The notes beneath the pieces were generated by a model that saw only the letters and a list, made by a program, of their open reading frames with translations, ran no database searches and was not told the DNA's origin. A stretch of 64,000 nt of DNA, from assembly GCF_963506605.1 (NCBI RefSeq), contig NC_083287.1:36022001-36086000 (forward strand), read 5' to 3'. Numbering within the stretch: the first letter of the stretch is position 1; the number at the start of each line of letters is the position of its first letter. Position numbers and translations under genes: made by a program. Source of the DNA: Zootoca vivipara (lineage: Eukaryota). Below, piece by piece: positions 3,056 through 64,000 of this stretch.

Positions 3056-6000
3056 TGTTGTTGTTGTTGTTTAGTCGTTTAGTCGTGTCCGACTCTTCGT
3101 GACCCCATGGACCATGGCACGCCAGGCACTCCTGTCTTCCACTGCCTCCCGCAGTTTGGTCAAACTCGTGTTCGTAGCTTCGAGAACACTGTCCAACCAT
3201 CTTGTCCTCTGTCGTCCCCTTCTCCTAGTGCCCTCAATCTTTCCCAACATCAGGGTCTTTTCCAAGGATTCTTCTCTTCTCGTGAGGTGGCCAAAGTATT
3301 GGAGCCTCAGCTTCACGATCTGTCCTTCCAGGGAGCACTCAGGGCTGATTTCCTTAAGAATGGATAGGTTTGATCTTCTTGCAGTCCATGGGACTCTCAA
3401 GAGTCTCCTCCAGCACCATAATTCAAAAGCATCAATTCTTCGGCGATCAGCCTTCTTTATGGTCCAGCTCTCACTTCCATACATCACTACTGGGAAAACC
3501 ATAGCTTTAAGTATACGGACCTTTGTCTGCAAGGTGATGTCTCTGCTTTTTAAGATGCTGTCTAGGTTTGTCATTGCTTTTCTCCCAAGAAGCAGACGTC
3601 TTTTAATTTCGTGACTGCTGTCACCACCTGCAGTGATCAAGGAGCCCAAGAAAGTAAAATCTCTCACTGCCTCCATTTCTTCCCCTTCTATTTGCCAGGA
3701 GGTGATGGGACCAGTGGCCATGATCTTGGTTTTTTTGATGTTGAGCTTCAGACCATATTTTGCGCTCTGCTCTTTCACCCTCATTAAAAGGTTCTTTAAT
3801 TCCTCCTCGCTTTCTGCCATCAAGGTTGTGTCATCTGCATATCTGAGGTTGTTGATATTTCTTCCGGCAATCTTAATTCCGGCTTGGGATTCATCTAGTC
3901 CAGCCTTTCGCATGATGAATTCTGCATATAAGTTAAATAAGCAGGGAGACAATATACAACCTTGTCGTACTCCTTTCCCAATTTTGAACCAATCAGTTGT
4001 TCCATATCCAGTTCTAACTGTAGCTTCTTGTCCCACATAGAAATTTCTCAGGAGACAGATGAGGTGATCAGGCACTCCCATTTCTTTAAGAACTTGCCAT
4101 AGTTTGCTGTGGTCGACACAGTCAAAGGCTTTTGCATAGTCAATGAAGCAGAAGTAGACGTTTTTCTGGAACTCTCTAGCTTTCTCCATAATCCAGCGCA
4201 TGTTTGCAATTTGGTCTCTGGTTCCTCTGCCTCTTCGAAATCCAGCTTGCACTTCTGGGAGTTCTCGGTCCACATACTGCCTAAGCCTGCCTTGTAGAAT
4301 TTTAAGCATGACCTTGCTAGCGTGTGAAATGAGCGCAATTGTGCGGTAGTTGGAGCATTCTTTGGCACTGCCCTTCTTTGGAATTGGGATGTAGACTGAT
4401 CTTCTCCAATCCTCTGGCTATTGCTGAGTTTTCCAAACTTGCTGGCATATTGGGTGTAGCACCTTAACAGCATCATCTTTTAAAATTTTAAATAGTTCAG
4501 CTGGGATATCATCACTTCCACTGGCCTTGTTATTAGCAATGCTTTCTAAGGCCCATTTGACTTCACTCTCCAAGATGTCTGGCTCAAGGTCAGCAGCCAC
4601 ACTACCTGAGGTGTACAAGACCTCCATATCTTTCTGGTATAATTCCTGTGTGTATTCTTGCCACCTCTTCTTGATGTCTTCTGCTTCTGTTAGGTCCTTA
4701 CCACTTTTGTCCTTGATTATGGTAATCTTTGTACGAAATGTTCCTTTCATATCTCCAATTTTCTTGAACAGATCTCTGGTTTTCCCCATTCTATTGTTTT
4801 CCTCTATTTCTTTGCATTGCTCATTTAAGAAGACCCTCTTGTCTCTCCTTGCTGTTTTTTGGAAATCTGCATTCAGTTTCCTGTATCTTTCCCTATCTCC
4901 CTTGCATTTTGCTTGCCTCCTCTCCTCCGCTATTTGTAAGGCCTCATTGGACAGCCATTTTGCTTTCTTGCATTTCCTTTTCCTTGGGATGGTTTTCGTT
5001 GCTGCCTCCTGTATAATGTTACGAGCCTCCATCCATAGTTCTTCAGGCACTCTGCCCACCAAATCTAAATCCTTAAACCTGTTCCTCACTTCCACTGTGT
5101 ATTCATAAGGGATTTGATTCAGATTGTATCTTACTGGCCCAGTGGTTTTTCCTACTTTCTTCAGTTTAAGCTGGAATTTTGCTATAAGAAGCTGATGATC
5201 TGAGTTACAGTCAGCTCCAGGTCTTGTTTTTGCTGACTGTATAGAGCTTCTCCATCTTTGGCTGCAGAGAATATAATCAATCTGATTTCGATGCTGCCCA
5301 TTTGGTGATATCCATGTGTAGAGTCGTCTCTTGTGTTGTTGGAAGAGAGTGTTTGTGATGACCAGCTTGTTCTCTTGACAGAACTCTATTAGCCTTTGCC
5401 CTGCTTCATTTTGAACTCCAAGGCCAAACTTACCAGTTGTTCCTTTTATCTCTTGATTCCCTACTTTAGCATTCCAATCCCCTGTAATGAGAAGAACATC
5501 CTTCTTTGGTGTCATTTCTAGAAGGTGTTGTAGGTCTTCATAGAATTGGTCAATTTCACTTTCTTCAGCACCGGTAGTTGGTGCATAAACTTGGATTACT
5601 GTGATGTTAAAAGGTCTGCCTTGGATTCGTATCGAGATCATTCTGTCATTTTTGAGATTGCATCCCATTACAGCTTTTGCCACTCTTTTGTTGACTATGA
5701 GGGCCACTCCATTTCTTCTACGGGATTCTTGCCCACAGTAGTAGATATGATAGTCATCCGAACTGAATTCGCCCATTCCCTTCCATTTTAGTTCACTGAT
5801 GCCCAGGATGTCAATATTTATTCTTGTCATCTCATTTTTGACCACATCCAGCTTACCTCCATCCATGGTTCTTACATTCCAGGTTCCTATGCAATATTTT
5901 CCTTTACAGCATCGGACTTTCCTTTCGCTTCCAGGCATATCCGCAACTGAGCGTCCTTTCGACTTTGGCCCAGCCGCTTCATCAGCTCTGAATCTACTTG

Positions 6001-6285
6001 TACTTGTCCTCCGCTCTTCCTCAGTAGCATGTTGGACGCCTTCCGACCTGAGGGGCTCATCTTCCAGCGTCATAACTTTTATATGCCTGTTGTCTTTGTC
6101 CATGGAGTTTTCTTGGCAGGGATACTGGAGTGGCTTGCCAGTTCCTTCTCCAGGTGGATCACGTTTAGTCAAAACTCTCCACTATGACCTGTCCATCTTG
6201 GGTGGCCCTGCATGGCATAGCTCATAGCTTCTCTGAGTTATTCAAGCCCCTTCGCCACGACAAGGCATTGATCCATGAAGGGGCG
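3056..6285 (-). mobile_element. Full-length Bov-B (RTE clade) LINE, about 3.2 kb
   Basis: APE endonuclease motifs (GTWNVRT, GISE, GDWNA, IDYI, SDH), RT YADD motif, C-terminus HGVTKSRTRLND, (CAA)n tail, 7-bp TSD aatgcat (3049-3055 / 6286-6292). Confidence 0.96.
3071..6103 (-). pseudogene. Bov-B endonuclease/reverse transcriptase ORF interrupted by one TGG>TAG stop at 4418-4420
   Basis: ORFs 4418..6172 and 3071..4309 are in the same frame. The copy at the end of the window reads KTQQWPEDW at this site. Confidence 0.92.
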
Positions 6286-6911: not shown

Positions 6912-7031
6912 GTAACTTTGTGATATTTCCTTGCCATCCTTTGCATAAGCAGTTTTTGTCTTCCTGTTTAGCCAACCGAATTAGACCATATGTTGCTTTT
7001 AGCCCAGGGTTGGGAAACATATAGGCCTCCA

Positions 7032-7254
7032 TAGTTCTAGTTACAGGTAGGTAGCCGTGTTGGTCTGAGTCGAAACAAAATAAAAAAAATCCTTCAGTAG
7101 CACCTTAAAGACCAACAAAGTTTTTATTTTGGTATGAGCTTTCGTGTGCATGCACACTTGGTATCTGACGAAGTGTGCATGCACACGAAAGCTCATACCA
7201 AAATAAAAACTTTGTTGGTCTTTAAGGTGCTACTGAAGGATTTTTTTTATTATG
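7032..7254. mobile_element. Penelope-like element terminal fragment arranged as an inverted repeat, inserted in an older hAT-MITE-like repeat
   Basis: Arms 7079-7159 and 7171-7251 are perfect reverse complements; flanking duplication taggcctcca (7022-7031 / 7255-7264). The family is assigned from recognising the gtagccgtgttggtctg...gtagcacctt..agaccaac motif. Confidence 0.75.
7158..7201 (+). ncRNA. Minimal type I hammerhead ribozyme motif (Penelope-type)
   Basis: Helix I ttggtat/ataccaa; core CTGACGA (7165-7171); helix II gtgtg-catg-cacac; GAAA (7187-7190); palindromic AGCT in place of helix III; predicted cleavage after C7194. Confidence 0.7.
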
Positions 7255-7902
7255 TAGGCCTCCAGATGATGTTAGATTACAAGTCCCTTTATCCCCAGCC
7301 TGCATGGTCAACGGTCAGGGATAGGAATTTATACACCAACAACACCTGGAGGGCCAAGCCCAGCCCTAGCCCAATCCACCCCAACAGCAGCCTACAAGAT
7401 GCCTTTGGGGAGGGTCAACACCAAACCTCAAGGGGTCTTTGGCATGGTATAACAAATGCCCTCACTCCATTGCCAATGTCCCTGTCCTTGCTGACACTGG
7501 CACCCACCCCACCACTGGAGAGCCCCTTGTGTCCCCCATCTTTCTCTTTGCAGCAGCAGCAGCATTGCTACTGCCCTTTTCCCTGTATTTCCCCCTCTGC
7601 CAGCTCTTGACTCTGAGAAAAGGCCAAATAAAGGTTCTTCTTCAGAACCAGGCATTCTGAGTGAGATGGACAGGAGAATGCCTGTGCTGTAACCTCAAGG
7701 TTTCTAAGTATTTGACAATAACAGATTAAAAGCCCAGTCAGGTTTTTTTTTTGGGGGGGGGAGAGACTGGAGGATGCTTGCAGGTCAGTTACATTAGATT
7801 TGTGATTAAAGAGTACATAGAAAGATACTTTGCATTCATAGTTGATTGTTATGTGATCTATTGAAGGGATTCATAATTTCATTTTAAAAATCCTTCCAAC
7901 AG

Positions 7903-8082
7903 ATGAGATTTTGGTATCAGTTGTCCCAGGATGCCCAGCTGAGTGTCTTTCTTCGAACTCCTGTTGATGGGGATTTGCAAAGCTTACATAACTCAAAGCC
8001 TTTCAAGAGCACAATGCAGTGGGCAAAAGCAAATGTCCTTTTAAAAAATATCACTGGCGATGAAATTATAGGACCTTTTCAG
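7903..8082 (+). CDS. MALRD1: MALRD1 exon, MAM domain (MRFWYQLSQ...IIGPFQ), phase 0-0
   Basis: caacag|ATG acceptor, CAG|gtaagc donor, 180 bp; matches ORF 7903..8187 up to the donor. Confidence 0.9.
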
Positions 8083-9710
8083 GTAAGCCCCTTACCTGCA
8101 CCAAGGTGCAAGTGTACTCAAGTAGTTATTTGCTGTTGGTATTCCTCATTGCAAAATAACTTTAAAACTTTAACAATAACAATGTAGTTGGCTGGATCCG
8201 GATTAAGTCAGTTGTCCTAGTGGAAATAATTTGAAATTACTGTAAATCATAACTAATCTGTTCCATTGATCTAAGTAGGACTTAAATTCAACTAGCTTGA
8301 TATGGATCCAACCCAATAATTTACTTCAGCTGAAATTAAAAATAAAGGAGAATGCTGCTAAATAGTATGGCACGTGTTAATAGGTATCTAAGATTGGTTT
8401 AGAAACAATTGCAGAATATTCAGAATTTTGCATTTCTAGAGATCATATTTATTCTAGTAGATAGTGTTATGGTAAGTAGCATTTAGAGAAGGACTTGCCA
8501 ATTTCTCAGGAGCCATTATGATTTCTATACACTCATTCAGAGGCCAAACCCTTTTACAGCTAGTCAGACTCAGTAGGACAGTAGGAGGAAGAGCTTTCCA
8601 ATGGTGTTGATATTCAGTTATATAAAAATTTTTAAATGATGTGACATTAAAATGTGGAATATCTTTTCTTACAAGGTTTGAAAAATATTTTATTTTTGGT
8701 ATGAGTAAGACTTTCCACATACTTTGACTGAAATTTGGTAGGGCTGCCAGAGGCTAGATCAGGTTCATAGCAGGAGTAGGATCATCCTGATGTTGCTGGA
8801 CTACACCTCCAATCATCCCTGACCCTTCTGGATGTGGCTAATGGGAACTGGAGTCCAACAGGAGGACCATGGGTTCCCCATTCTAGTCTATGCAAAACTG
8901 ATCCTTTCAGCCACATTAATCATGCACAGCCTTTTTAGTAACTTCTTTTATGTTGTTCCACTTGCAGTGTTGTCACCATTTTTTGGTCCTGCAATATCCC
9001 AGTACCTGGCAAATATGATGTTATGTCTAAACTAACAACATAAGTAGGAATAGGCAAGCTCCCAACATCTCAATTCAGACTCGGCTGAATTGGACTTGTT
9101 CGACTTAAAAAATAAATAAATCAAATCTTGGGAAGGCCTGGTGAATTCTAGATGCTTTCTTCCCTGGTTGGACTCCGCTGCTGTGTACCTTCCCTACCTT
9201 CAGTTTTCCTCTGTCGCCTTGCAACTTCCTCCCTTTCCCTATCAGTGTGCAAAGGTGGGCATAAATGGCAGCTCTGTTGCCTAGGTTACCAGAGCCTTAC
9301 CAATAGGACGTTTTTGAAGCCAAGATTGATTGAATTGTACTTGGCTAGGGCTTCTTACTCAAAGGCTTTTCCCACTCAGCCACTCCTTAGCTGCATTCCT
9401 TTGTGCAGGTTAGTTTTTTTCCTAGTCTGAGGAGCAGAGAGTTGAGCAGCGTAGGAGAGCAGGTGACAATGCAGGCCTTTAGCCTTCCCACTCCTATCTA
9501 GGGGGTGTTACACCCTGTTGTCAGTGCCCTAAGTTGCCATACATGTGTGTTAATAACTTGGCAGCTTTCCCACCAGTGACAATTATGGTATTGTCATTGA
9601 CGGGCAATGTTTCTCTAGCCAAATTCTTTAAATGACATATGAATTCCTCAGAACACATCACTGCCGTTCCTCCCTTCCACTCCAACTCTCTGTGATTCTA
9701 ATGTGGAGCC

Positions 9711-10617
9711 TTGTTGTTGTTGTTGTTGTTTAGTCGTTTAGTCGTGTCCGACTCTTCGTGACCCCATGGACCAGAGCACGCCAGGCACTCCTGTCTTCCA
9801 CTGCCTCCCGTAGTTTGGTCAAACTCATGTTCGTAGCTTCGAGAACACTGTCCAACCATCTTGTCCTCTGTCGTCCCCTTCTCCTAGTGCCCTCAATCTT
9901 TCCCAACATCAGGGTCTTTTCCAAGGATTCTTCTCTTCTCATGAGGTGGCCAAAGTATTGGAGCCTCAGCTTCACGATCTGTCCTTCCAGGGAGCACTCA
10001 GGGCTGATTTCCTTAAGAATGGATAGGTTTGATCTTCTAGCAGTCCATGGGACTCTCAAGAGTCTCCTCCAGCACCATAATTCAAAAGCATCAATTCTTC
10101 GGCGATCAGCCTTCTTTATGGTCCAGCTCTCACTTCCATACATCACTACTGGGAAAACCATAGCTTTAACTATACGGACCTTTGTCGGCAAGGTGATGTC
10201 TCTGCTTTTTAAGATGCTGTCTAGGTTTGTCATTGCTTTTCTCCCAAGAAGCAGGCGTCTTTTAATTTCGTGACTGCTGTCACCATCTGCAGTGATCAAG
10301 GAGCCCAAGAAAGTAAAATCTCTCACTGCCTCCATTTCTTCCCCTTCTATTTGCCAGGAGGTGATGGGACCAGTGGCCATGATCTTGGTTTTTTTGATGT
10401 TGAGCTTCAGACCATATTTTGCGCTCTCCTCTTTCACCCTCATTAAAAGGTTCTTTAATTCCTCCTCACTTTCTGCCATCAAGGTTGTGTCATCTGCATA
10501 TCTGAGGTTGTTGATATTTCTTCCGGCAATCTTAATTCCGGCTTGGGATTCATCTAGTCCAGCCTTTCGCATGATGAATTCTGCATATAAGTTAAATAAG
10601 CAGGGGGACAATATACA
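9711..10617 (-). mobile_element. 5'-truncated young Bov-B copy with no visible TSD
   Basis: Nearly identical to the 3' 900 bp of 3056-6285; open RT C-terminal frame; (CAA)n tail. Confidence 0.95.
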
Positions 10618-10707
10618 TAATTTAGAACCCTTCAAAACTCTTCAGACGTTCATGTCCAGATATTGGTGCTTTTCTTTTTTTTAAACAACAACAGCAGCAT
10701 CCATCAA

Positions 10708-10833
10708 CACACCAGGAGTGGGGAGGGGACAGCACACAAACTCAAGGCTCATGTATGAAACAACAGAACACTGCATTCAGTTTCTGCTTGCGTTTCCCAT
10801 AGACATCTAGTTGACCACTGTAAGAGCAGAATG
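10708..10833 (-). repeat. Inverted 126-bp copy of 2603-2728
   Basis: Exact reverse complement. Confidence 0.95.
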
Positions 10834-11875
10834 TTTTTTGTGTACATTCTGGGGTGAAATCTAGATACATACAAAAAAACACTGTGAAAATGTTTTTTTT
10901 TTAAAAAAGTTTTAAAATATATATTGAATTTGCCATTAGCTCACAATCATCATCTAGTGTCACATTTGTATAATGTACTTAAAACACACTCAAAATGTTA
11001 TATTTGCAGCTGTATAGCTGAGTCCCAAGTATAGGTTTTTGTACAAGTACCTATGTTTAGAGGATGCCTTAGAATCATGCATGTCAGAGTTTACATTTAT
11101 TCAATGGCCAATGACAGATACTCAAGTATACCCTAAGAAGGGTGGGGCAAGCTTTGTTTGCCTCCATGCTGCCTTACATGCATGTCCAGTTGGTGCATAT
11201 GCACATACAGTTATGTACATAAAGACTCAAATCACATATTTAATCTCTAGACTGTATATTGGAGGTCTTGGACCTCACGATTTGAGCCTGTGTACAAGGG
11301 TTTGTACATGAGTATTCCCCAATTAGACATAAGGGCCCTATGTGAATAGCTAGCGGTATTCAAAACAGTGAAGGAATATCAAGTAGGGAGTCTCTCAGTT
11401 CTCACCTCATGCAGGAGAATAATTTACAGAAGTATAATCGATGTAGTCCAATGAATCACATTATTCTGTGATTCAGTATGTGCAGAATTTGGCATGTGGT
11501 ACAGAATCTGCTGACTGTCATGGAATCTGCAGAATCTAAGCTATGGATTTGTAAAGCCACCGAGCATTGATGGCCCACAAGATCAGGACAATTTTGCAAG
11601 CCTTTTTCCTGAGCACACAGCAACAAACATTGAATTGAACCCCCACTACTTCTGCAGACTGAAGAATGTATCGAATACATTAGCTGAAGGGAAATAAGAA
11701 GTATTGCTAGGCAGGAAAGGATTGGGGGTTATAGCCAACTAAAGTTTACTCATTGGGTGAAATTCAACTATGTTTTATTCAATGTAAACCTACTGGAATT
11801 AATGTGATTAAGAAAGTCATGCCCACTTATTTCAGTTGGTCTACTCTGAGTAGTACTAACATTGGAATCAAGCCA

Positions 11876-12070
11876 TAGGAGGTTGCCTTGTGCCAAGTCA
11901 GATTTTTGTCCATCTAGTCTAGTACTGTTTTCTCTGACTGGGAGCTGATCTCCAGGGTCTCAAGCAGAGATCTTTTCTACCTCCTGCTACCTGATCCATT
12001 TATCTGGAAATACGAGGAATTCAGCCTTGGAACTTTTTACATACAAAGTATATGCTCTACCCCTGAGCCA
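11876..12070 (-). mobile_element. Old tRNA-derived SINE with CR1-like 3' part (Squam3-like)
   Basis: Degenerate tRNA-like head on the minus strand (tggctcaggggtagagcat...); related copies near 29826-30040 and 31481-31630. Confidence 0.55.
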
Positions 12071-12095
12071 AAAATATGGCAAATGTGTTCTGTAG

Positions 12096-12312
12096 ATAAT
12101 ACTTAAGTTTTAGCCACTGTTTTTTTCTTGCAAGAAAATGTAACTGTGTTTTTTTAAGGGGCAACAATGTGGGAAACCTCTGATTCCTCATCTCTTTATT
12201 GTCCACCTGGATTGTTGGCATGTAAGAATGGAGACTGTATTACTTCTGACAAGTTTTGTGATTTTTGTGAAGTTTCCTGATTGCCCAGATGGCAGTGACG
12301 AAGCCCTGTGCT
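12096..12312 (+). pseudogene. MALRD1: Decayed MALRD1 exon (MAM C-terminus plus LDLa repeat), expected phase 0-1
   Basis: ttctgtag|ATA ATA CTT (IIL), then in-frame TAG at 12111 and TAA at 12141. ATV...NVTV and CPPGLLACKNGDCITSDKFCDF lie in a shifted frame that ends in TGA at 12278. PDCPDGSDEALC|gtaagt is back in the original frame. The expected DDI motif is absent. Confidence 0.8.
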
Positions 12313-12767
12313 GTAAGTGAAAACACATTGATCTGTAATTCATGCTTAAAGATCTTTAAATGTGCATGTCAATAGCCTTATGGCTATTCCATTAGGAGGA
12401 TCAGTTAATTAAGACAAACCACACAGAAGGTGAAGCACTTTCACCCAGTGTCTTTATTGATGTCTTTGTGTACAGTTGTGGCTACTTCTCAGATTAAAAC
12501 CAAAATTGAAAATGACTTGTCAGAATAACAGAACCTCAGAAAGTGATATTTAGAGCTTCACTTTTCAAAGGAGGAATTCAGCTTTACTTTCAGCTTTGCT
12601 TTCTTAAAACAGTCTCCTCTCTCTTCTTAATACAGACACTCACAGTAGGGATCTATAGAGTTCTAACTGATTTGATAAGGATGATTCACACATGTCTGGC
12701 ATGTGGAAACAGGAGCAAAGCTGGAGCTAGTGAACACGCCTTTTCAAAGCTAAATAATACTCTAGAT

Positions 12768-12903
12768 GAGGCTTCCTCAACCTTGGCCCTCCAGATGTTT
12801 TTGGCCTACAGCTCCCATGATCCCTAGCTAGCAGGACCAGTGGTCAGGGATGATGGGAATTGTAGTCTCAAAACATCTGGAGGGCCGAGGTTGAGGAAGC
12901 TTG
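12768..12903. mobile_element. 136-bp hAT (Charlie-like) MITE
   Basis: Long TIRs; 8-bp TSD ctctagat / ctccagat. Confidence 0.85.
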
Positions 12904-13248
12904 CTCCAGATCATGCATGGGCTTTCTTTGATCCCTTGGCCCACCAATTTGTTTATAAGTGTACAAGTTGTGCAAACTCTGTTTTGTTCACAGAACCAGA
13001 TGCTCTTAGGTCTCCCTTCCCTGTGCAATCCCTTGCACTTCCCAATAACTGCCTTGGAAGGTTGAGGAACCTGCCAGAACAGCCTAGGAAGTGGTGTGGT
13101 GGTTGCAGGAGAGCATCAGAACAGCACTTTCTAATTAGGCACCTTCCAATTCACCTGCCCTTCCAACTGCATCTTGTCCTTCTGTATACACTGGTTGCTA
13201 ACCTGTAAGATAAATTGATGCAGACTGAAATAAATATCTATATTCCAG

Positions 13249-13401
13249 CTGCTAAATGTGACTTTGAAACAGACAGCTGTGGCTGGATGGAAACAGCCAG
13301 GGGTGATGCATTTGATTGGGTAAGGAGCTCCAGAAGCAGTCTACCCCCTGCTTTCCAGAAGCAAGCTCCAGCACAGGACCACACCTATAACCAACCTGCA
13401 G
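13249..13401 (+). CDS. MALRD1: MALRD1 exon, MAM start (AKCDFETDSCGW...DHTYNQPA), phase 1-1
   Basis: ttccag|CT acceptor, G|gtaagg donor, 153 bp. Confidence 0.93.
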
Positions 13402-13942: not shown

Positions 13943-14443
<501 letters not shown>

Positions 14444-16191: not shown

Positions 16192-16698
<507 letters not shown>

Positions 16699-17199: not shown

Positions 17200-17775
<576 letters not shown>

Positions 17776-25876: not shown

Positions 25877-25984
<108 letters not shown>

Positions 25985-26485: not shown

Positions 26486-26680
<195 letters not shown>

Positions 26681-29486: not shown

Positions 29487-29661
29487 CCTCAGTTGCTTGT
29501 GACTTTGACAGTGGAAACTTCTGTGAATGGTATCAGCCTGCTGCTCAAGTGGCAACAACAGCTTCAACCCATCCTGTTAATATATTCCAGTGGGGCCTTG
29601 GAAAAGGTGCCGGCATCCACCCAGGTGGAGAGGGCCATAGACCGTTGACTGATCATACGAT
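29487..29661 (+). CDS. MALRD1: MALRD1 exon, MAM start (SVACDFDSGNFCEWYQ...RPLTDHT), phase 1-2
   Basis: caatag|CC acceptor, AT|gtgagt donor, 175 bp. Confidence 0.92.
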
Positions 29662-42471: not shown

Positions 42472-42675
<204 letters not shown>

Positions 42676-45309: not shown

Positions 45310-45420
45310 GTGCTCAGAAAAGAGGGAAACATGTCTTTTGAACTTTGGTCACAGAGTGGCCCCCAGGGTCCTCAGTGGAACAGAGCTGAAGTGCTTTTAG
45401 GTGTTCAATCTTATTTTCAG
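45310..45420 (+). CDS. MALRD1: MALRD1 exon, MAM (VLRKEGNMSFELWSQSGPQGPQWNRAEVLLGVQSYFQ), phase 0-0
   Basis: ttttag|GTG acceptor, CAG|gtatgt donor, 111 bp. Confidence 0.93.
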
Positions 45421-46738: not shown

Positions 46739-47044
<306 letters not shown>

Positions 47045-52850: not shown

Positions 52851-53297
<447 letters not shown>

Positions 53298-62563: not shown

Positions 62564-64000
62564 TTGTTGTTGTTTAGTCGTTTAGTCGTGTCCGACTCTT
62601 CGTGACCCCATGGACCATAGCACGCCAGGCACTCCTGTCTTGCACTGCCTCCCGCAGTTTGGTCAAACTCATGTTCGTAGCTTCGAGAACACTGTCCAAC
62701 CATCTTGTCCTCTGACGTCCCCTTCTCCTAGTGCCCTCAATCTTTCCCAACATCAGGGTCTTTTCCAAGGATTCTTCTCTTCTCATGAGGTGGCCAAAGT
62801 ATTGGAGCCTCAGCTTCACGATCTGTCCTTCCAGGGAGCACTCAGGGCTGATTTCCTTAAGAATGGATAGGTTTGATCTTCTTGCAGTCCATGGGACTCT
62901 CAAGAGTCTCCTCCAGCACCATAATTCAAAAGCATCAATTCTTCGGCGATCAGCCTTCTTTATGGTCCAGCTCTCACTTCCATACATCACTACTGGGAAA
63001 ACCATAGCTTTAACTATACGGACCTTTGTCGGCAAGGTGATGTCTCTGCTTTTTAAGATGCTGTCTAGGTTTGTCATTGCTTTTCTCCCAAGAAGCAGGC
63101 GTCTTTTAATTTCGTGACTGCTGTCACCATCTGCAGTGATCAAGGAGCCCAAGAAGGTAAAATCTCTCACTGCCTCCATTTCTTCCCCTTCTATTTGCCA
63201 GGAGGTGATGGGACCAGTGGCCATGATCTTGGTTTTTTTGATGTTGAGCTTCAGACCATATTTTGCGCTCTCCTCTTTCACCCTCATTAAAAGGTTCTTT
63301 AATTCCTCCTCGCTTTCTGCCATCAAGGTTGTGTCATCTGCATATCTGAGGTTGTTGATATTTCTTCCGGCAATCTTAATTCCGGCTTGGGATTCATCTA
63401 GTCCAGCCTTTCGCATGATGAATTCTGCATACAAGTTAAATAAGCAGGGAGACAATATACAACCTTGTCGTACTCCTTTCCCAATTTTGAACCACTCAGT
63501 TGTTCCATATCCAGTTCTAACTGTAGCTTCTTGTCCCACATAGAGATTTCTCAGGAGACAGATGAGGTGATCAGGCACTCCCATTTCTTTAAGAACTTGC
63601 CATAGTTTGCTGTGGTCGACACAGTCAAAGGCTTTTGCATAGTCAATGAAGCAGAAGTAGACGTTTTTCTGGAACTCTCTAGCTTTCTCCATAATCCAGC
63701 GCATGTTTGCTATTTGGTCTCTGGTTCCTCTGCCCTTTCGAAATCCAGCTTGCACTTCTGGGAGTTCTTGGTCCGCATACTGCCTAAGCCTGCCTTGTAG
63801 AATTTTAAGCATAACCTTGCTAGCGTGTGAAATGAGCGCAATTGTGCGGTAGTTGGAGCATTCTTTGGCACTGCCCTTCTTTGGAATTGGGATGTAGACT
63901 GATCTTCTCCAATCCTCTGGCCATTGCTGAGTTTTCCAAACTTGCTGGCATATTGGGTGTAGCACCTTAACAGCATCATCTTTTAAAATTTTAAATAGTT
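62564..64000 (-). mobile_element. Young Bov-B copy running off the end of the window
   Basis: Uninterrupted 463-aa RT ORF (62574..63965); (CAA)n tail. Confidence 0.96.

What the first reader, a model, noticed from the sequence alone, without database searches (positions are those of the whole stretch)
12096..12312. One MALRD1 exon is wrecked while all 14 neighbouring exons are intact
Seen: the exon ending at 8082 is phase 0 and the exon starting at 13249 is phase 1, so a phase 0-1 exon is needed between them. The only candidate I found begins IIL after ttctgtag. It has in-frame stops at 12111 and 12141, lacks the MAM DDI motif, and carries an LDLa repeat split across two frames. There are about 7 extra bases near 12266-12275, where tttgtga and aagttt recur locally. 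Skipping this exon alone shifts the frame, yet the 12 downstream exons are open and well conserved. Established: MALRD1/Diet1 is an intestinal regulator of FGF15/19-dependent bile acid feedback in mammals. Inference: several independent lesions confined to one exon point to local domain loss with a rescue route. Sequencing error or whole-gene death fit less well.
Basis: partly seen in the sequence, partly recalled or inferred. Interest (0 to 1): 0.8.

Follow-up and report, generated by a model that had tools for sequence, protein, structure and literature searches.

The report
Decayed exon in lizard MALRD1 gene
One exon of a lizard's MALRD1 (Diet1) gene, which should close the third MAM domain and encode the third LDLa repeat, has truly decayed while the 14 other exons in the window stay intact, so a useful protein needs a splicing detour that could not be observed here.

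Summary
Window 12096-12312 is the homologue of the MALRD1 exon that closes MAM domain 3 and encodes LDLa repeat 3. Compared with the intact 262-nt Podarcis exon it carries +5 nt, about -57 nt (which removes the VAVDDIS..C end of the MAM domain), an AAA>TAA change and +7 nt inside the LDLa.

The lesions are not an artefact. A read-derived contig of the same species is identical over 11003-12796. Two relatives about 3.5-4.5% diverged also lack the missing 52 nt.

The window's exons reproduce Zootoca vivipara RefSeq MALRD1 exactly. All 14 neighbouring exons are open, have GT-AG borders, and change no faster than in Podarcis. Whole-gene death is therefore unlikely.

Including the exon normally gives stop codons. 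Skipping it alone shifts the frame. How the gene gets round it is unresolved. A deletion-made acceptor at 12159 gives an open, in-frame 154-nt exon. The RefSeq Zootoca isoforms instead skip about 467 residues to an alternative acceptor at 16199. The only RNA run laid had no reads on the gene.

LDLa3 is absent from 82 of 108 vertebrate models, so losing it is ordinary. Losing the last MAM3 strand is not. Other first-stage notes on this same stretch had already proposed the cryptic acceptor and an internal start codon.

This is a real but modest case of single-exon decay.

The parts
12096..12312 (+). Decayed exon, 217 nt, phase 0 to 1. It is the homologue of the exon that encodes the last strand and closing Cys of MAM3, a linker, and LDLa3.
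   Evidence: A frameshift-aware alignment to the 87-aa Podarcis exon peptide gives +5, about -57 and +7 nt plus AAA>TAA. The two LDLa halves lie in different frames. The sequence was read.
12108..12112 (+). About 5 extra nt after IIL(K). They shift the frame and lie next to the entry-frame TAG at 12111-12113.
12141..12143 (+). Second stop (TAA) in the entry frame.
12155..12157 (+). TAA where Podarcis has Lys (..EQK|GAT..). It is a stop in the ancestral frame. Its last two bases with G12158 form the AAG of the cryptic acceptor.
12159..12312 (+). Candidate rescue exon of 154 nt. Its acceptor is tgtaactgtgtttttttaag|G. It is open in phase 0 to 1 and ends in FPDCPDGSDEALC.
   Evidence: It is the only acceptor with a good pyrimidine tract that gives an open, in-frame exon. 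Another real exon of this gene, 26487, also uses AAG|G. No junction has been observed.
12266..12275 (+). Site of the net 7-nt insertion inside LDLa3, between CDF and PDC, next to a local ttttgtga direct repeat.
   Evidence: Lacerta agilis and Podarcis proteins read CDFTPDC.
12228..12230 (+). ATG in the downstream-compatible frame, reading METVLLLTSFVIFVKFPDC... It is a possible internal start with a hydrophobic N-terminus.
Evidence: It was not tested.
7903..8082 (+). Intact upstream exon (body of MAM3), phase 0 to 0.
   Evidence: It differs from Podarcis muralis at 4 of 60 residues.
13249..13401 (+). Intact downstream exon (start of MAM4), phase 1 to 1.
   Evidence: It is identical to Lacerta agilis over the aligned residues.
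16199..16579 (+). Exon whose RefSeq Zootoca X2/X3 form uses an acceptor at 16198|16199, 13 nt upstream of the normal 16211|16212, when joined to an exon of MAM2.

Best explanation
The stretch is a genuinely decayed coding exon of MALRD1 (Diet1) in a lacertid lizard. The window's exons match Zootoca vivipara RefSeq proteins exactly.

In relatives with an intact gene (Podarcis) this exon supplies three things: the last beta-strand and closing cysteine of MAM domain 3, a linker, and LDLa repeat 3. Here, deletions of about 57 nt, a 5-nt gain, a Lys-to-stop change and a 7-nt gain have destroyed both canonical readings.

The shortening is inherited, because two diverged relatives share it. The rest of the gene is still maintained.

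Normal inclusion puts stop codons in the mRNA, and skipping the exon alone shifts the frame. A productive mRNA must therefore bypass it.

My preferred route is inferred, not observed. The deletions placed a T7 tract in front of AAG|G at 12158/12159. The 7-nt gain makes the resulting 154-nt exon exactly frame-compatible (0 to 1) and stop-free. The mRNA would then keep every other exon and replace the MAM3 end and LDLa3 with a 51-residue linker.

Approximate odds:
- real exon decay with the gene retained: 0.85
- the 12159 route is the main productive one: 0.35
- a multi-exon skip of the RefSeq kind: 0.25
- other routes: the remainder
For: - Lesions mapped against the Podarcis exon. The LDLa halves lie in two frames.
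- A 1794-nt read-derived contig of the same species is identical over 11003-12796. Contigs of two relatives span the exon with only 17 and 26 gap letters, so they cannot hold the missing 52 nt.
- Nine downstream junction peptides reproduce Zootoca RefSeq X2 exactly, all GT-AG.
- All 14 neighbouring exons are open. Window-specific against Podarcis-specific residue changes are 3:1 upstream, 2:2 just downstream and 12:9 in the rest, so no class is accelerated.
- The two exons just downstream differ from Lacerta agilis at 1 of 81 residues.
- Acceptor 12159 has a pyrimidine fraction of 0.71 with a T7 run, against 0.47 for the original acceptor. It is the only decent acceptor that gives an open in-frame exon. 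Exon 26487 shows that this gene does use AAG|G.
- My rough estimate: neutral decay since the shared lesion would give about 7-10 disabling hits in the 2.2 kb downstream, so P(none) < 0.002.
Against: - No transcript evidence. The one RNA run laid had zero reads on any exon.
- None of the 283 proteins fetched contains the 154-nt exon's peptide.
- The RefSeq Zootoca isoforms seen (X2, X3, X7) skip or start after this region.
- A at -3 is a disfavoured acceptor base (from general knowledge of splice sites).
- MAM3 without its last strand may not fold, and the new peptide has hydrophobic stretches.
- A net length that keeps the frame has a 1 in 3 chance by accident.
- The rate tests have little power (few changes per class).
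Confidence: 0.6

Rival explanations
1. Multi-exon skipping is the productive route. As in RefSeq Zootoca isoforms X2/X3, the first exon of MAM2 is joined to an alternative acceptor at 16199. This drops about 467 residues (the rest of MAM2, LDLa2, MAM3, the decayed exon and most of MAM4). The intact neighbours of the decayed exon would then be freshly orphaned exons.
For: - X2 and X3 read ...LKDRSSGTN|[10 protein letters not shown], which matches window 16199 onward exactly.
- An AG with a pyrimidine tract lies at 16197-16198, and the 13-nt shift fits a phase-1 donor.
- All four variable sites seen among the three species in exon 7903-8082 change the residue. This is my codon reading, table 3.
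Against: - These are predicted models, and I could not see their read support.
- The four skipped exons in the window (550 nt) are all intact. My rough P under neutrality is about 0.15.
- Two of them differ from Lacerta agilis at 1 of 81 residues, against about 4-7 expected if neutral.
- The chimeric MAM domain would lack about 21 residues, including a conserved Cys.
Confidence: 0.25
2. The product is truncated at the N-terminus. The upstream part is cut off. Translation, or an internal promoter, starts inside the exon at ATG 12228 (METVLLLTSFVIFVKF...). The 7-nt gain puts this ATG in frame with MAM4 onward, so the frame-shifted LDLa serves as a new hydrophobic leader.
For: - The frame is open from 12144 to the donor and contains an ATG followed by 12 hydrophobic residues.
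- The Lacerta agilis RefSeq protein starts inside this same exon (MLETSD...).
- Zootoca X7 starts further downstream.
Against: - There is no evidence for an internal promoter.
- The leader's n-region is acidic, not basic.
- The N-terminal exons in Zootoca RefSeq X2 are as conserved against Podarcis (8 of about 220 residues; polarised by eye against the Hemicordylus outgroup these split 4:3, with one unresolved) as the downstream exons. They are also intact, which argues that they are still translated into something useful (my count).
- Model starts inside genes are a common by-product of picking the longest reading frame in a transcript with a premature stop.
Confidence: 0.08
3. The whole gene is dying. 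This exon is just the first visible casualty of a recent loss of MALRD1 function.
For: - Canonical splicing gives a premature stop.
- Annotated lacertid and other squamate models are often truncated or fragmented.
Against: - The shortening is shared by species 3.5-4.5% diverged, so it is old.
- Yet about 2.2 kb of downstream exons has no stop, frameshift or splice-site hit.
- Residue change against Podarcis is 3.6% and symmetrical between the two lineages.
Confidence: 0.05
4. The lesions are an assembly or sequencing artefact, for example homopolymer errors.
For: The lesions lie in T-rich, low-complexity sequence.
Against: - A read-derived contig at depth about 15 is identical across the exon.
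- Relatives share the short exon.
- Stops made by substitution, and a 57-nt loss, are not homopolymer errors.
Confidence: 0.02

Closest known systems
The intact orthologous exon in Podarcis muralis and P. raffonei MALRD1 (e.g. RefSeq isoform X1, P0278)
   Same: Same position between the same flanking exons. Same start (IIL), the same LDLa3 residues (34/36 and 12/12 identical), and the same phase 0 to 1.
   Different: Podarcis has 262 nt and reads through IILQATVQSTKAFVAVDDISITKAC...CDFTPDCPDGSDEALC. The window has 217 nt with two frameshifts, stops, and no VAVDDIS..C.
Optional or lost LDLa3 in other vertebrate MALRD1 genes (short form made by an internal donor)
   Same: The LDLa after MAM3 is dispensable. 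It is absent from 82 of 108 models, degenerate in 7 (horse, deer, camel and bat isoforms), and intact in 19. Rhineura isoforms X1 and X4 differ by exactly this LDLa.
   Different: All 108 models keep the MAM3 end (..VA[IVL]DDI..C). In the window that part is destroyed. The place where the internal donor should be reads G|GG instead of G|GT.
Exon decay or exon loss in otherwise conserved multi-domain genes (a general, well-known phenomenon; from general knowledge)
   Same: One exon of a repeat-domain protein gathers disabling changes while its neighbours stay under selection.
   Different: Here skipping the exon alone is not frame-neutral. The lesions add up to a frame-preserving length and create a usable-looking new acceptor.
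Mammalian MALRD1/Diet1, an intestinal promoter of FGF15/19 levels, described as nine MAM domains interspersed with nine LDLa domains (PMC8804323)
   Same: The same gene family and the same alternating MAM/LDLa architecture.
   Different: Its function in reptiles is untested. This lineage cannot make the canonical MAM3-LDLa3 module.

Membership tests
MALRD1 / Diet1 orthologue | Alternating MAM (PF00629) and LDLa (PF00057) domains | tested here: met
   The window's exons hit both families (MAM up to E = 3.6e-31) in alternating order.
MALRD1 / Diet1 orthologue | Exon-by-exon collinear match to annotated MALRD1 proteins of close relatives | tested here: met
   Exons are collinear with Podarcis X1 and 97-100% identical to Zootoca RefSeq isoforms. 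Nine junction peptides are reproduced exactly.
MALRD1 / Diet1 orthologue | Intestinal expression and an effect on FGF15/19 and bile acids | not testable with these tools
   This is known for mouse and human only (PMC8804323). The one RNA run laid had no reads on the gene.
Decayed (pseudo-)exon inside a live gene | Homologous to a coding exon of relatives, at the same place | tested here: met
   There is no second copy in the intron.
Decayed (pseudo-)exon inside a live gene | Every canonical reading is disabled | tested here: met
   The long form has TAG 12111 and TAA 12141. The short form has lost its donor and holds the TAG. The ancestral frame has TAA 12155 and two frameshifts.
Decayed (pseudo-)exon inside a live gene | The remaining exons are still under purifying selection | tested here: met
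   In the window, 14 of 14 exons are open with GT-AG borders and change at the Podarcis rate. Power is low for the two upstream exons. Exons outside the window were not examined.
Decayed (pseudo-)exon inside a live gene | Left out of, or altered in, the mature mRNA | tested here: inconclusive
   The RNA run had zero coverage. RefSeq X2, X3 and X7 lack the exon, but they are predictions.
Rescue by a new 3' splice site | An AG with a pyrimidine tract that gives an open, frame-compatible exon | tested here: met
   12159: tract 0.71 with T7, 154 nt, phase 0 to 1, no stop.
Rescue by a new 3' splice site | Junction reads 8082>12159 | not testable with these tools
   Also, the RNA run it covered was empty on this gene.
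Unitary pseudogene (whole gene dead) | Disabling lesions spread over the gene, with neutral evolution | tested here: not met
   There are no lesions in the 14 other exons. Residue change is 3.6% against Podarcis and symmetrical between lineages.
Assembly artefact | Reads disagree with the assembly | tested here: not met
   A read-derived contig has 0 differences over 11003-12796, and relatives share the short exon.

The most novel reading that the evidence does not exclude
Two successive accidents turned a dead exon into new coding sequence. Deletions that destroyed the MAM3 end also built a T7-AAG acceptor at 12159. A later 7-nt insertion then acted as a compensating frameshift. The result is a 154-nt exon, mostly frame-shifted LDLa sequence, that reconnects the upstream and downstream halves of MALRD1 in frame. 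A variant of this reading is that the same shifted frame supplies a new ATG and hydrophobic leader at 12228.
Probability: 0.3. Interest if true: 0.55.

Novelty: new member of a known kind. Interest (0 to 1): 0.32.

Why it matters
If transcripts confirm a bypass, this would be a clean natural example of how a modular repeat protein survives the loss of one domain-closing exon. It would show the same mutations that destroy an exon creating the splice site and frame that rescue the gene.

It also shows that MAM3-LDLa3 of MALRD1 is dispensable in at least one lizard lineage. That narrows which modules matter for the protein's role in FGF15/19 signalling.

If no bypass exists, it marks an early stage of partial gene loss.

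Either way the practical lesson is for annotation. The fragmented MALRD1 models in lacertids seen here would be explained by this lesion, though that link was not tested.

Tried and rejected
- Library search with one MAM exon. The top ranks were taken by invertebrate proteins with many MAM domains. Orthologues had to be picked out by tblastn against the window.
- The look-up of encoding contigs, to fetch relatives' DNA. No nucleotide alignment or dN/dS was therefore possible.
- Read laying. The RNA run gave zero reads on any exon. The difference tables were truncated, so the exact state of the two relatives inside the exon, including whether they carry the 7-nt gain, could not be read. Only the total gap counts were usable.
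- Word search with the 40-aa LDLa reading, hoping for short reading frames called on relatives' contigs. No candidates.
- Search for a second, intact copy of the MAM3 end in the intron or anywhere in the window. Only noise and paralogous MAM ends.
- Relative-rate tests on residues. No acceleration in any exon class, but too few changes to separate the bypass models.
- Literature. No paper mentions both MALRD1 and lizard.
- A search of all fetched proteins for the cryptic-exon peptide. None found.
- The Rfam scan of 7000-13300 found nothing.
- A joined, spliced protein model was not built or searched. Exons were handled one by one by reference.

Full report
**What is there**

The + strand of the window carries 15 exons of a MAM/LDLa repeat gene. 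Pfam finds MAM (PF00629) and LDLa (PF00057) in alternating order in the exon translations.

A library search seeded with one MAM exon, followed by tblastn against the window and a word search, identified the gene as MALRD1 (Diet1). The closest proteins are lacertid. Members of the Podarcis muralis cluster include RefSeq isoforms of Zootoca vivipara, Lacerta agilis, Podarcis raffonei and P. lilfordi, and the amphisbaenian Rhineura.

Nine downstream splice junctions, all GT-AG, reproduce Zootoca vivipara isoform X2 residue for residue. The window therefore comes from that species, or from something indistinguishable from it at protein level.

The exon map is:
- ..-6911
- 7903-8082 (phase 0 to 0)
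- 12096-12312 (0 to 1)
- 13249-13401 (1 to 1)
- 14331-14436 (1 to 2)
- 16212-16579
- 17333-17754
- 25877-25964
- 26487-26663
- 29487-29661
- 42495-42651
- 45310-45420
- 46808-47021
- 52930-53177
- 54084-..

**Check of the observation**

- The exon has an AG acceptor at 12094-12095 and a T|GTAAGT donor after 12312.
- In the frame set by the upstream exon it reads IILKF*PLFFSCKKM*..., with TAG at 12111 and TAA at 12141.
- The LDLa is split. Pfam positions 3-23 lie in the frame of 12158 and positions 26-37 in the frame of 12159.
- Podarcis and Lacerta read CDFTPDC where the window has seven extra bases.
- At 217 nt, skipping the exon alone shifts the frame.
- One small correction: the upstream exon begins at 7903.

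**Nature of the lesions**

The intact Podarcis exon encodes 87 residues (262 nt). It reads IILQATVQSTKAFVAVDDISITKAC (the end of MAM3), then a linker, then CPPGLLACKNGDCITSDKFCDFTPDCPDGSDEALC (LDLa3).

A frameshift-aware protein-to-DNA alignment gives the following:
- IIL is kept, followed by about 5 extra nt.
- ATV is kept.
- Blocks of 15, 30 and 12 nt are missing.
- FVAVDDISI is replaced by FFLQENVTV.
- The closing Cys is deleted.
- AAA has become TAA at 12155.
- The N-terminal half of the LDLa has a single residue change.
- Seven extra nt follow, and then the C-terminal half of the LDLa is identical.

The net change is -45 nt, so the length is still 1 modulo 3. The placement of the three deletion blocks is ambiguous, and they could be one complex event. 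The sequence there is T-rich with short direct repeats.

No other copy of the MAM3 end exists between 8083 and 13248.

**Not an artefact, and not new**

A 1794-nt contig built from the reads of a run of the same organism covers 11003-12796 with no difference. That run may come from the same sample as the assembly, so it confirms the reads rather than a second individual.

Contigs from two other organisms cover the exon in one piece. They show 43 and 42 substitutions over 1257 and 949 nt, with only 17 and 26 gap letters in total. They cannot contain the 52 nt that the window lacks relative to Podarcis. The shortening therefore predates the split of these three species.

Whether those relatives carry the 7-nt gain could not be read, because the tool's tables were truncated. 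Lacerta agilis does not carry it. Its RefSeq protein begins inside this exon (MLETSD...), just after the position of the TAA. This hints that the MAM3-end lesion is older than the LDLa frameshift.

**State of the rest of the gene**

All 14 neighbouring exons are open. Residue differences from Podarcis muralis, and their polarisation with Hemicordylus as outgroup, are:

| Exon class | Differences from P. muralis | Window-specific : Podarcis-specific |
|---|---|---|
| Two upstream exons | 6/96 | 3:1 |
| Two exons just downstream | 4/81 | 2:2 |
| The other ten | 27/743 | 12:9 |

No class is accelerated. The two exons just downstream differ from Lacerta agilis at 1 of 81 residues.

A rough calculation uses the substitution and indel densities seen. 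Neutral decay since the shared lesion would have put about 7-10 disabling hits into the 2.2 kb of the eleven complete downstream exons. None is seen.

Whole-gene death is therefore unlikely. The power for the two upstream exons alone is low. The four variable sites seen among the three species in exon 7903-8082 all change the residue (my reading, table 3). That is compatible with either weak constraint or chance.

**How the gene may get round the exon**

This part is inference. Three routes are compatible with the sequence.

*(a) A new acceptor at 12159.*
- The site reads tgtaactgtgtttttttaag|G.
- Its pyrimidine tract (0.71, T7) is better than that of the old acceptor (0.47).
- The same gene uses AAG|G at exon 26487.
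- The resulting 154-nt exon is the only variant with a decent acceptor that is open and phase 0 to 1.
- The tract was assembled by the deletions. The frame fits only because of the 7-nt gain.

*(b) A multi-exon skip.*
- RefSeq Zootoca X2 and X3 join the first exon of MAM2 to an acceptor at 16199, 13 nt upstream of the normal one.
- This drops about 467 residues.
- These are predictions whose read support I could not see.
- The intactness and conservation of the skipped exons argue mildly against this being the only functional form.

*(c) An internal start at ATG 12228.*
- It reads METVLLLTSFVIFVKF..., in frame with MAM4 onward.
- The N-terminal exons of Zootoca X2 are as conserved as the rest, which argues that they are still used.

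A further frame-neutral skip (8082>25877, 1266 nt) is arithmetically possible. However, it drops exons that the RefSeq models include.

No RNA evidence was obtained. The one RNA run laid had no reads on any exon. No fetched protein contains the 154-nt exon's peptide. A word search for short reading frames found nothing.

**Comparison with what is known**

In mouse and human, MALRD1/Diet1 is an intestinal protein described as nine MAM domains interspersed with nine LDLa domains. It raises FGF15/19 levels (PMC8804323).

Across 108 vertebrate models, the segment between MAM3 and MAM4:
- lacks the LDLa in 82,
- has an intact LDLa in 19,
- has a degenerate remnant in 7 mammalian isoforms.

Rhineura isoforms X1 and X4 differ by exactly this LDLa, through an internal donor. 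Loss of LDLa3 is thus ordinary. The MAM3 end, however, is present in all 108 models, and it is what this lineage has lost. In the window the internal donor position reads G|GG, so the short form is also unavailable.

No paper links MALRD1 and lizards.

**Limits**

- The joined spliced model was deliberately not built or searched. Exons were treated one by one.

**Verdict**

This is a real, inherited, single-exon decay in an otherwise maintained gene. The rescue route is still a hypothesis. Interest is modest unless transcripts show that the frame-shifted LDLa sequence has become coding.

Noticed in passing
window 3071-6172 (- strand); also 9734-10680 and 62578-63967: A LINE-type retrotransposon lies in the intron upstream of exon 6801. 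It has long reading frames that hit endonuclease (PF03372) and reverse transcriptase (PF00078). Two truncated copies of its 3' part lie elsewhere in the window, one of them in the intron before the decayed exon. Read depth there reaches millions, and the RNA run holds reads on it.
   Followed up: partly
window 12690-13059: A second very high-copy repeat lies between the decayed exon and the next exon. Contig depth reaches millions in all three species, with thousands of RNA reads. Its family was not identified.
   Followed up: no
window 16197-16212: Two acceptors lie 13 nt apart (ttttag|AC and ctcag|GT). RefSeq Zootoca X2/X3 use the upstream one when joining from MAM2. The normal path from 14436 uses the downstream one.
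   Followed up: partly
proteins P0202 vs P0278 (Podarcis muralis): The UniRef P. muralis entry has Gly in place of the third Cys of LDLa3 (KNGDGITS). RefSeq isoform X1 has Cys (KNGDCITS). This could be a polymorphism or a difference between assemblies.
   Followed up: no
proteins P0216, P0235, P0238, P0240, P0242, P0244: Long isoforms of mammalian MALRD1 (horse, deer, camel, bat and two unnamed) carry an in-frame but degenerate LDLa3 remnant. It lacks the N-terminal cysteines.
   Followed up: partly
window 7158-7201: Another first-stage note calls this a hammerhead ribozyme motif. An Rfam scan of 7000-13300 at gathering thresholds found no family at all.
   Followed up: partly
proteins P0217, P0234, P0255, P0273, P0275: Several squamate MALRD1 models (Tiliqua, Pogona, Sceloporus, Rhineura, Lacerta) start at or near MAM3 or this exon and lack MAM1-2. 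This may reflect an alternative promoter or poor N-terminal assembly.
   Followed up: no
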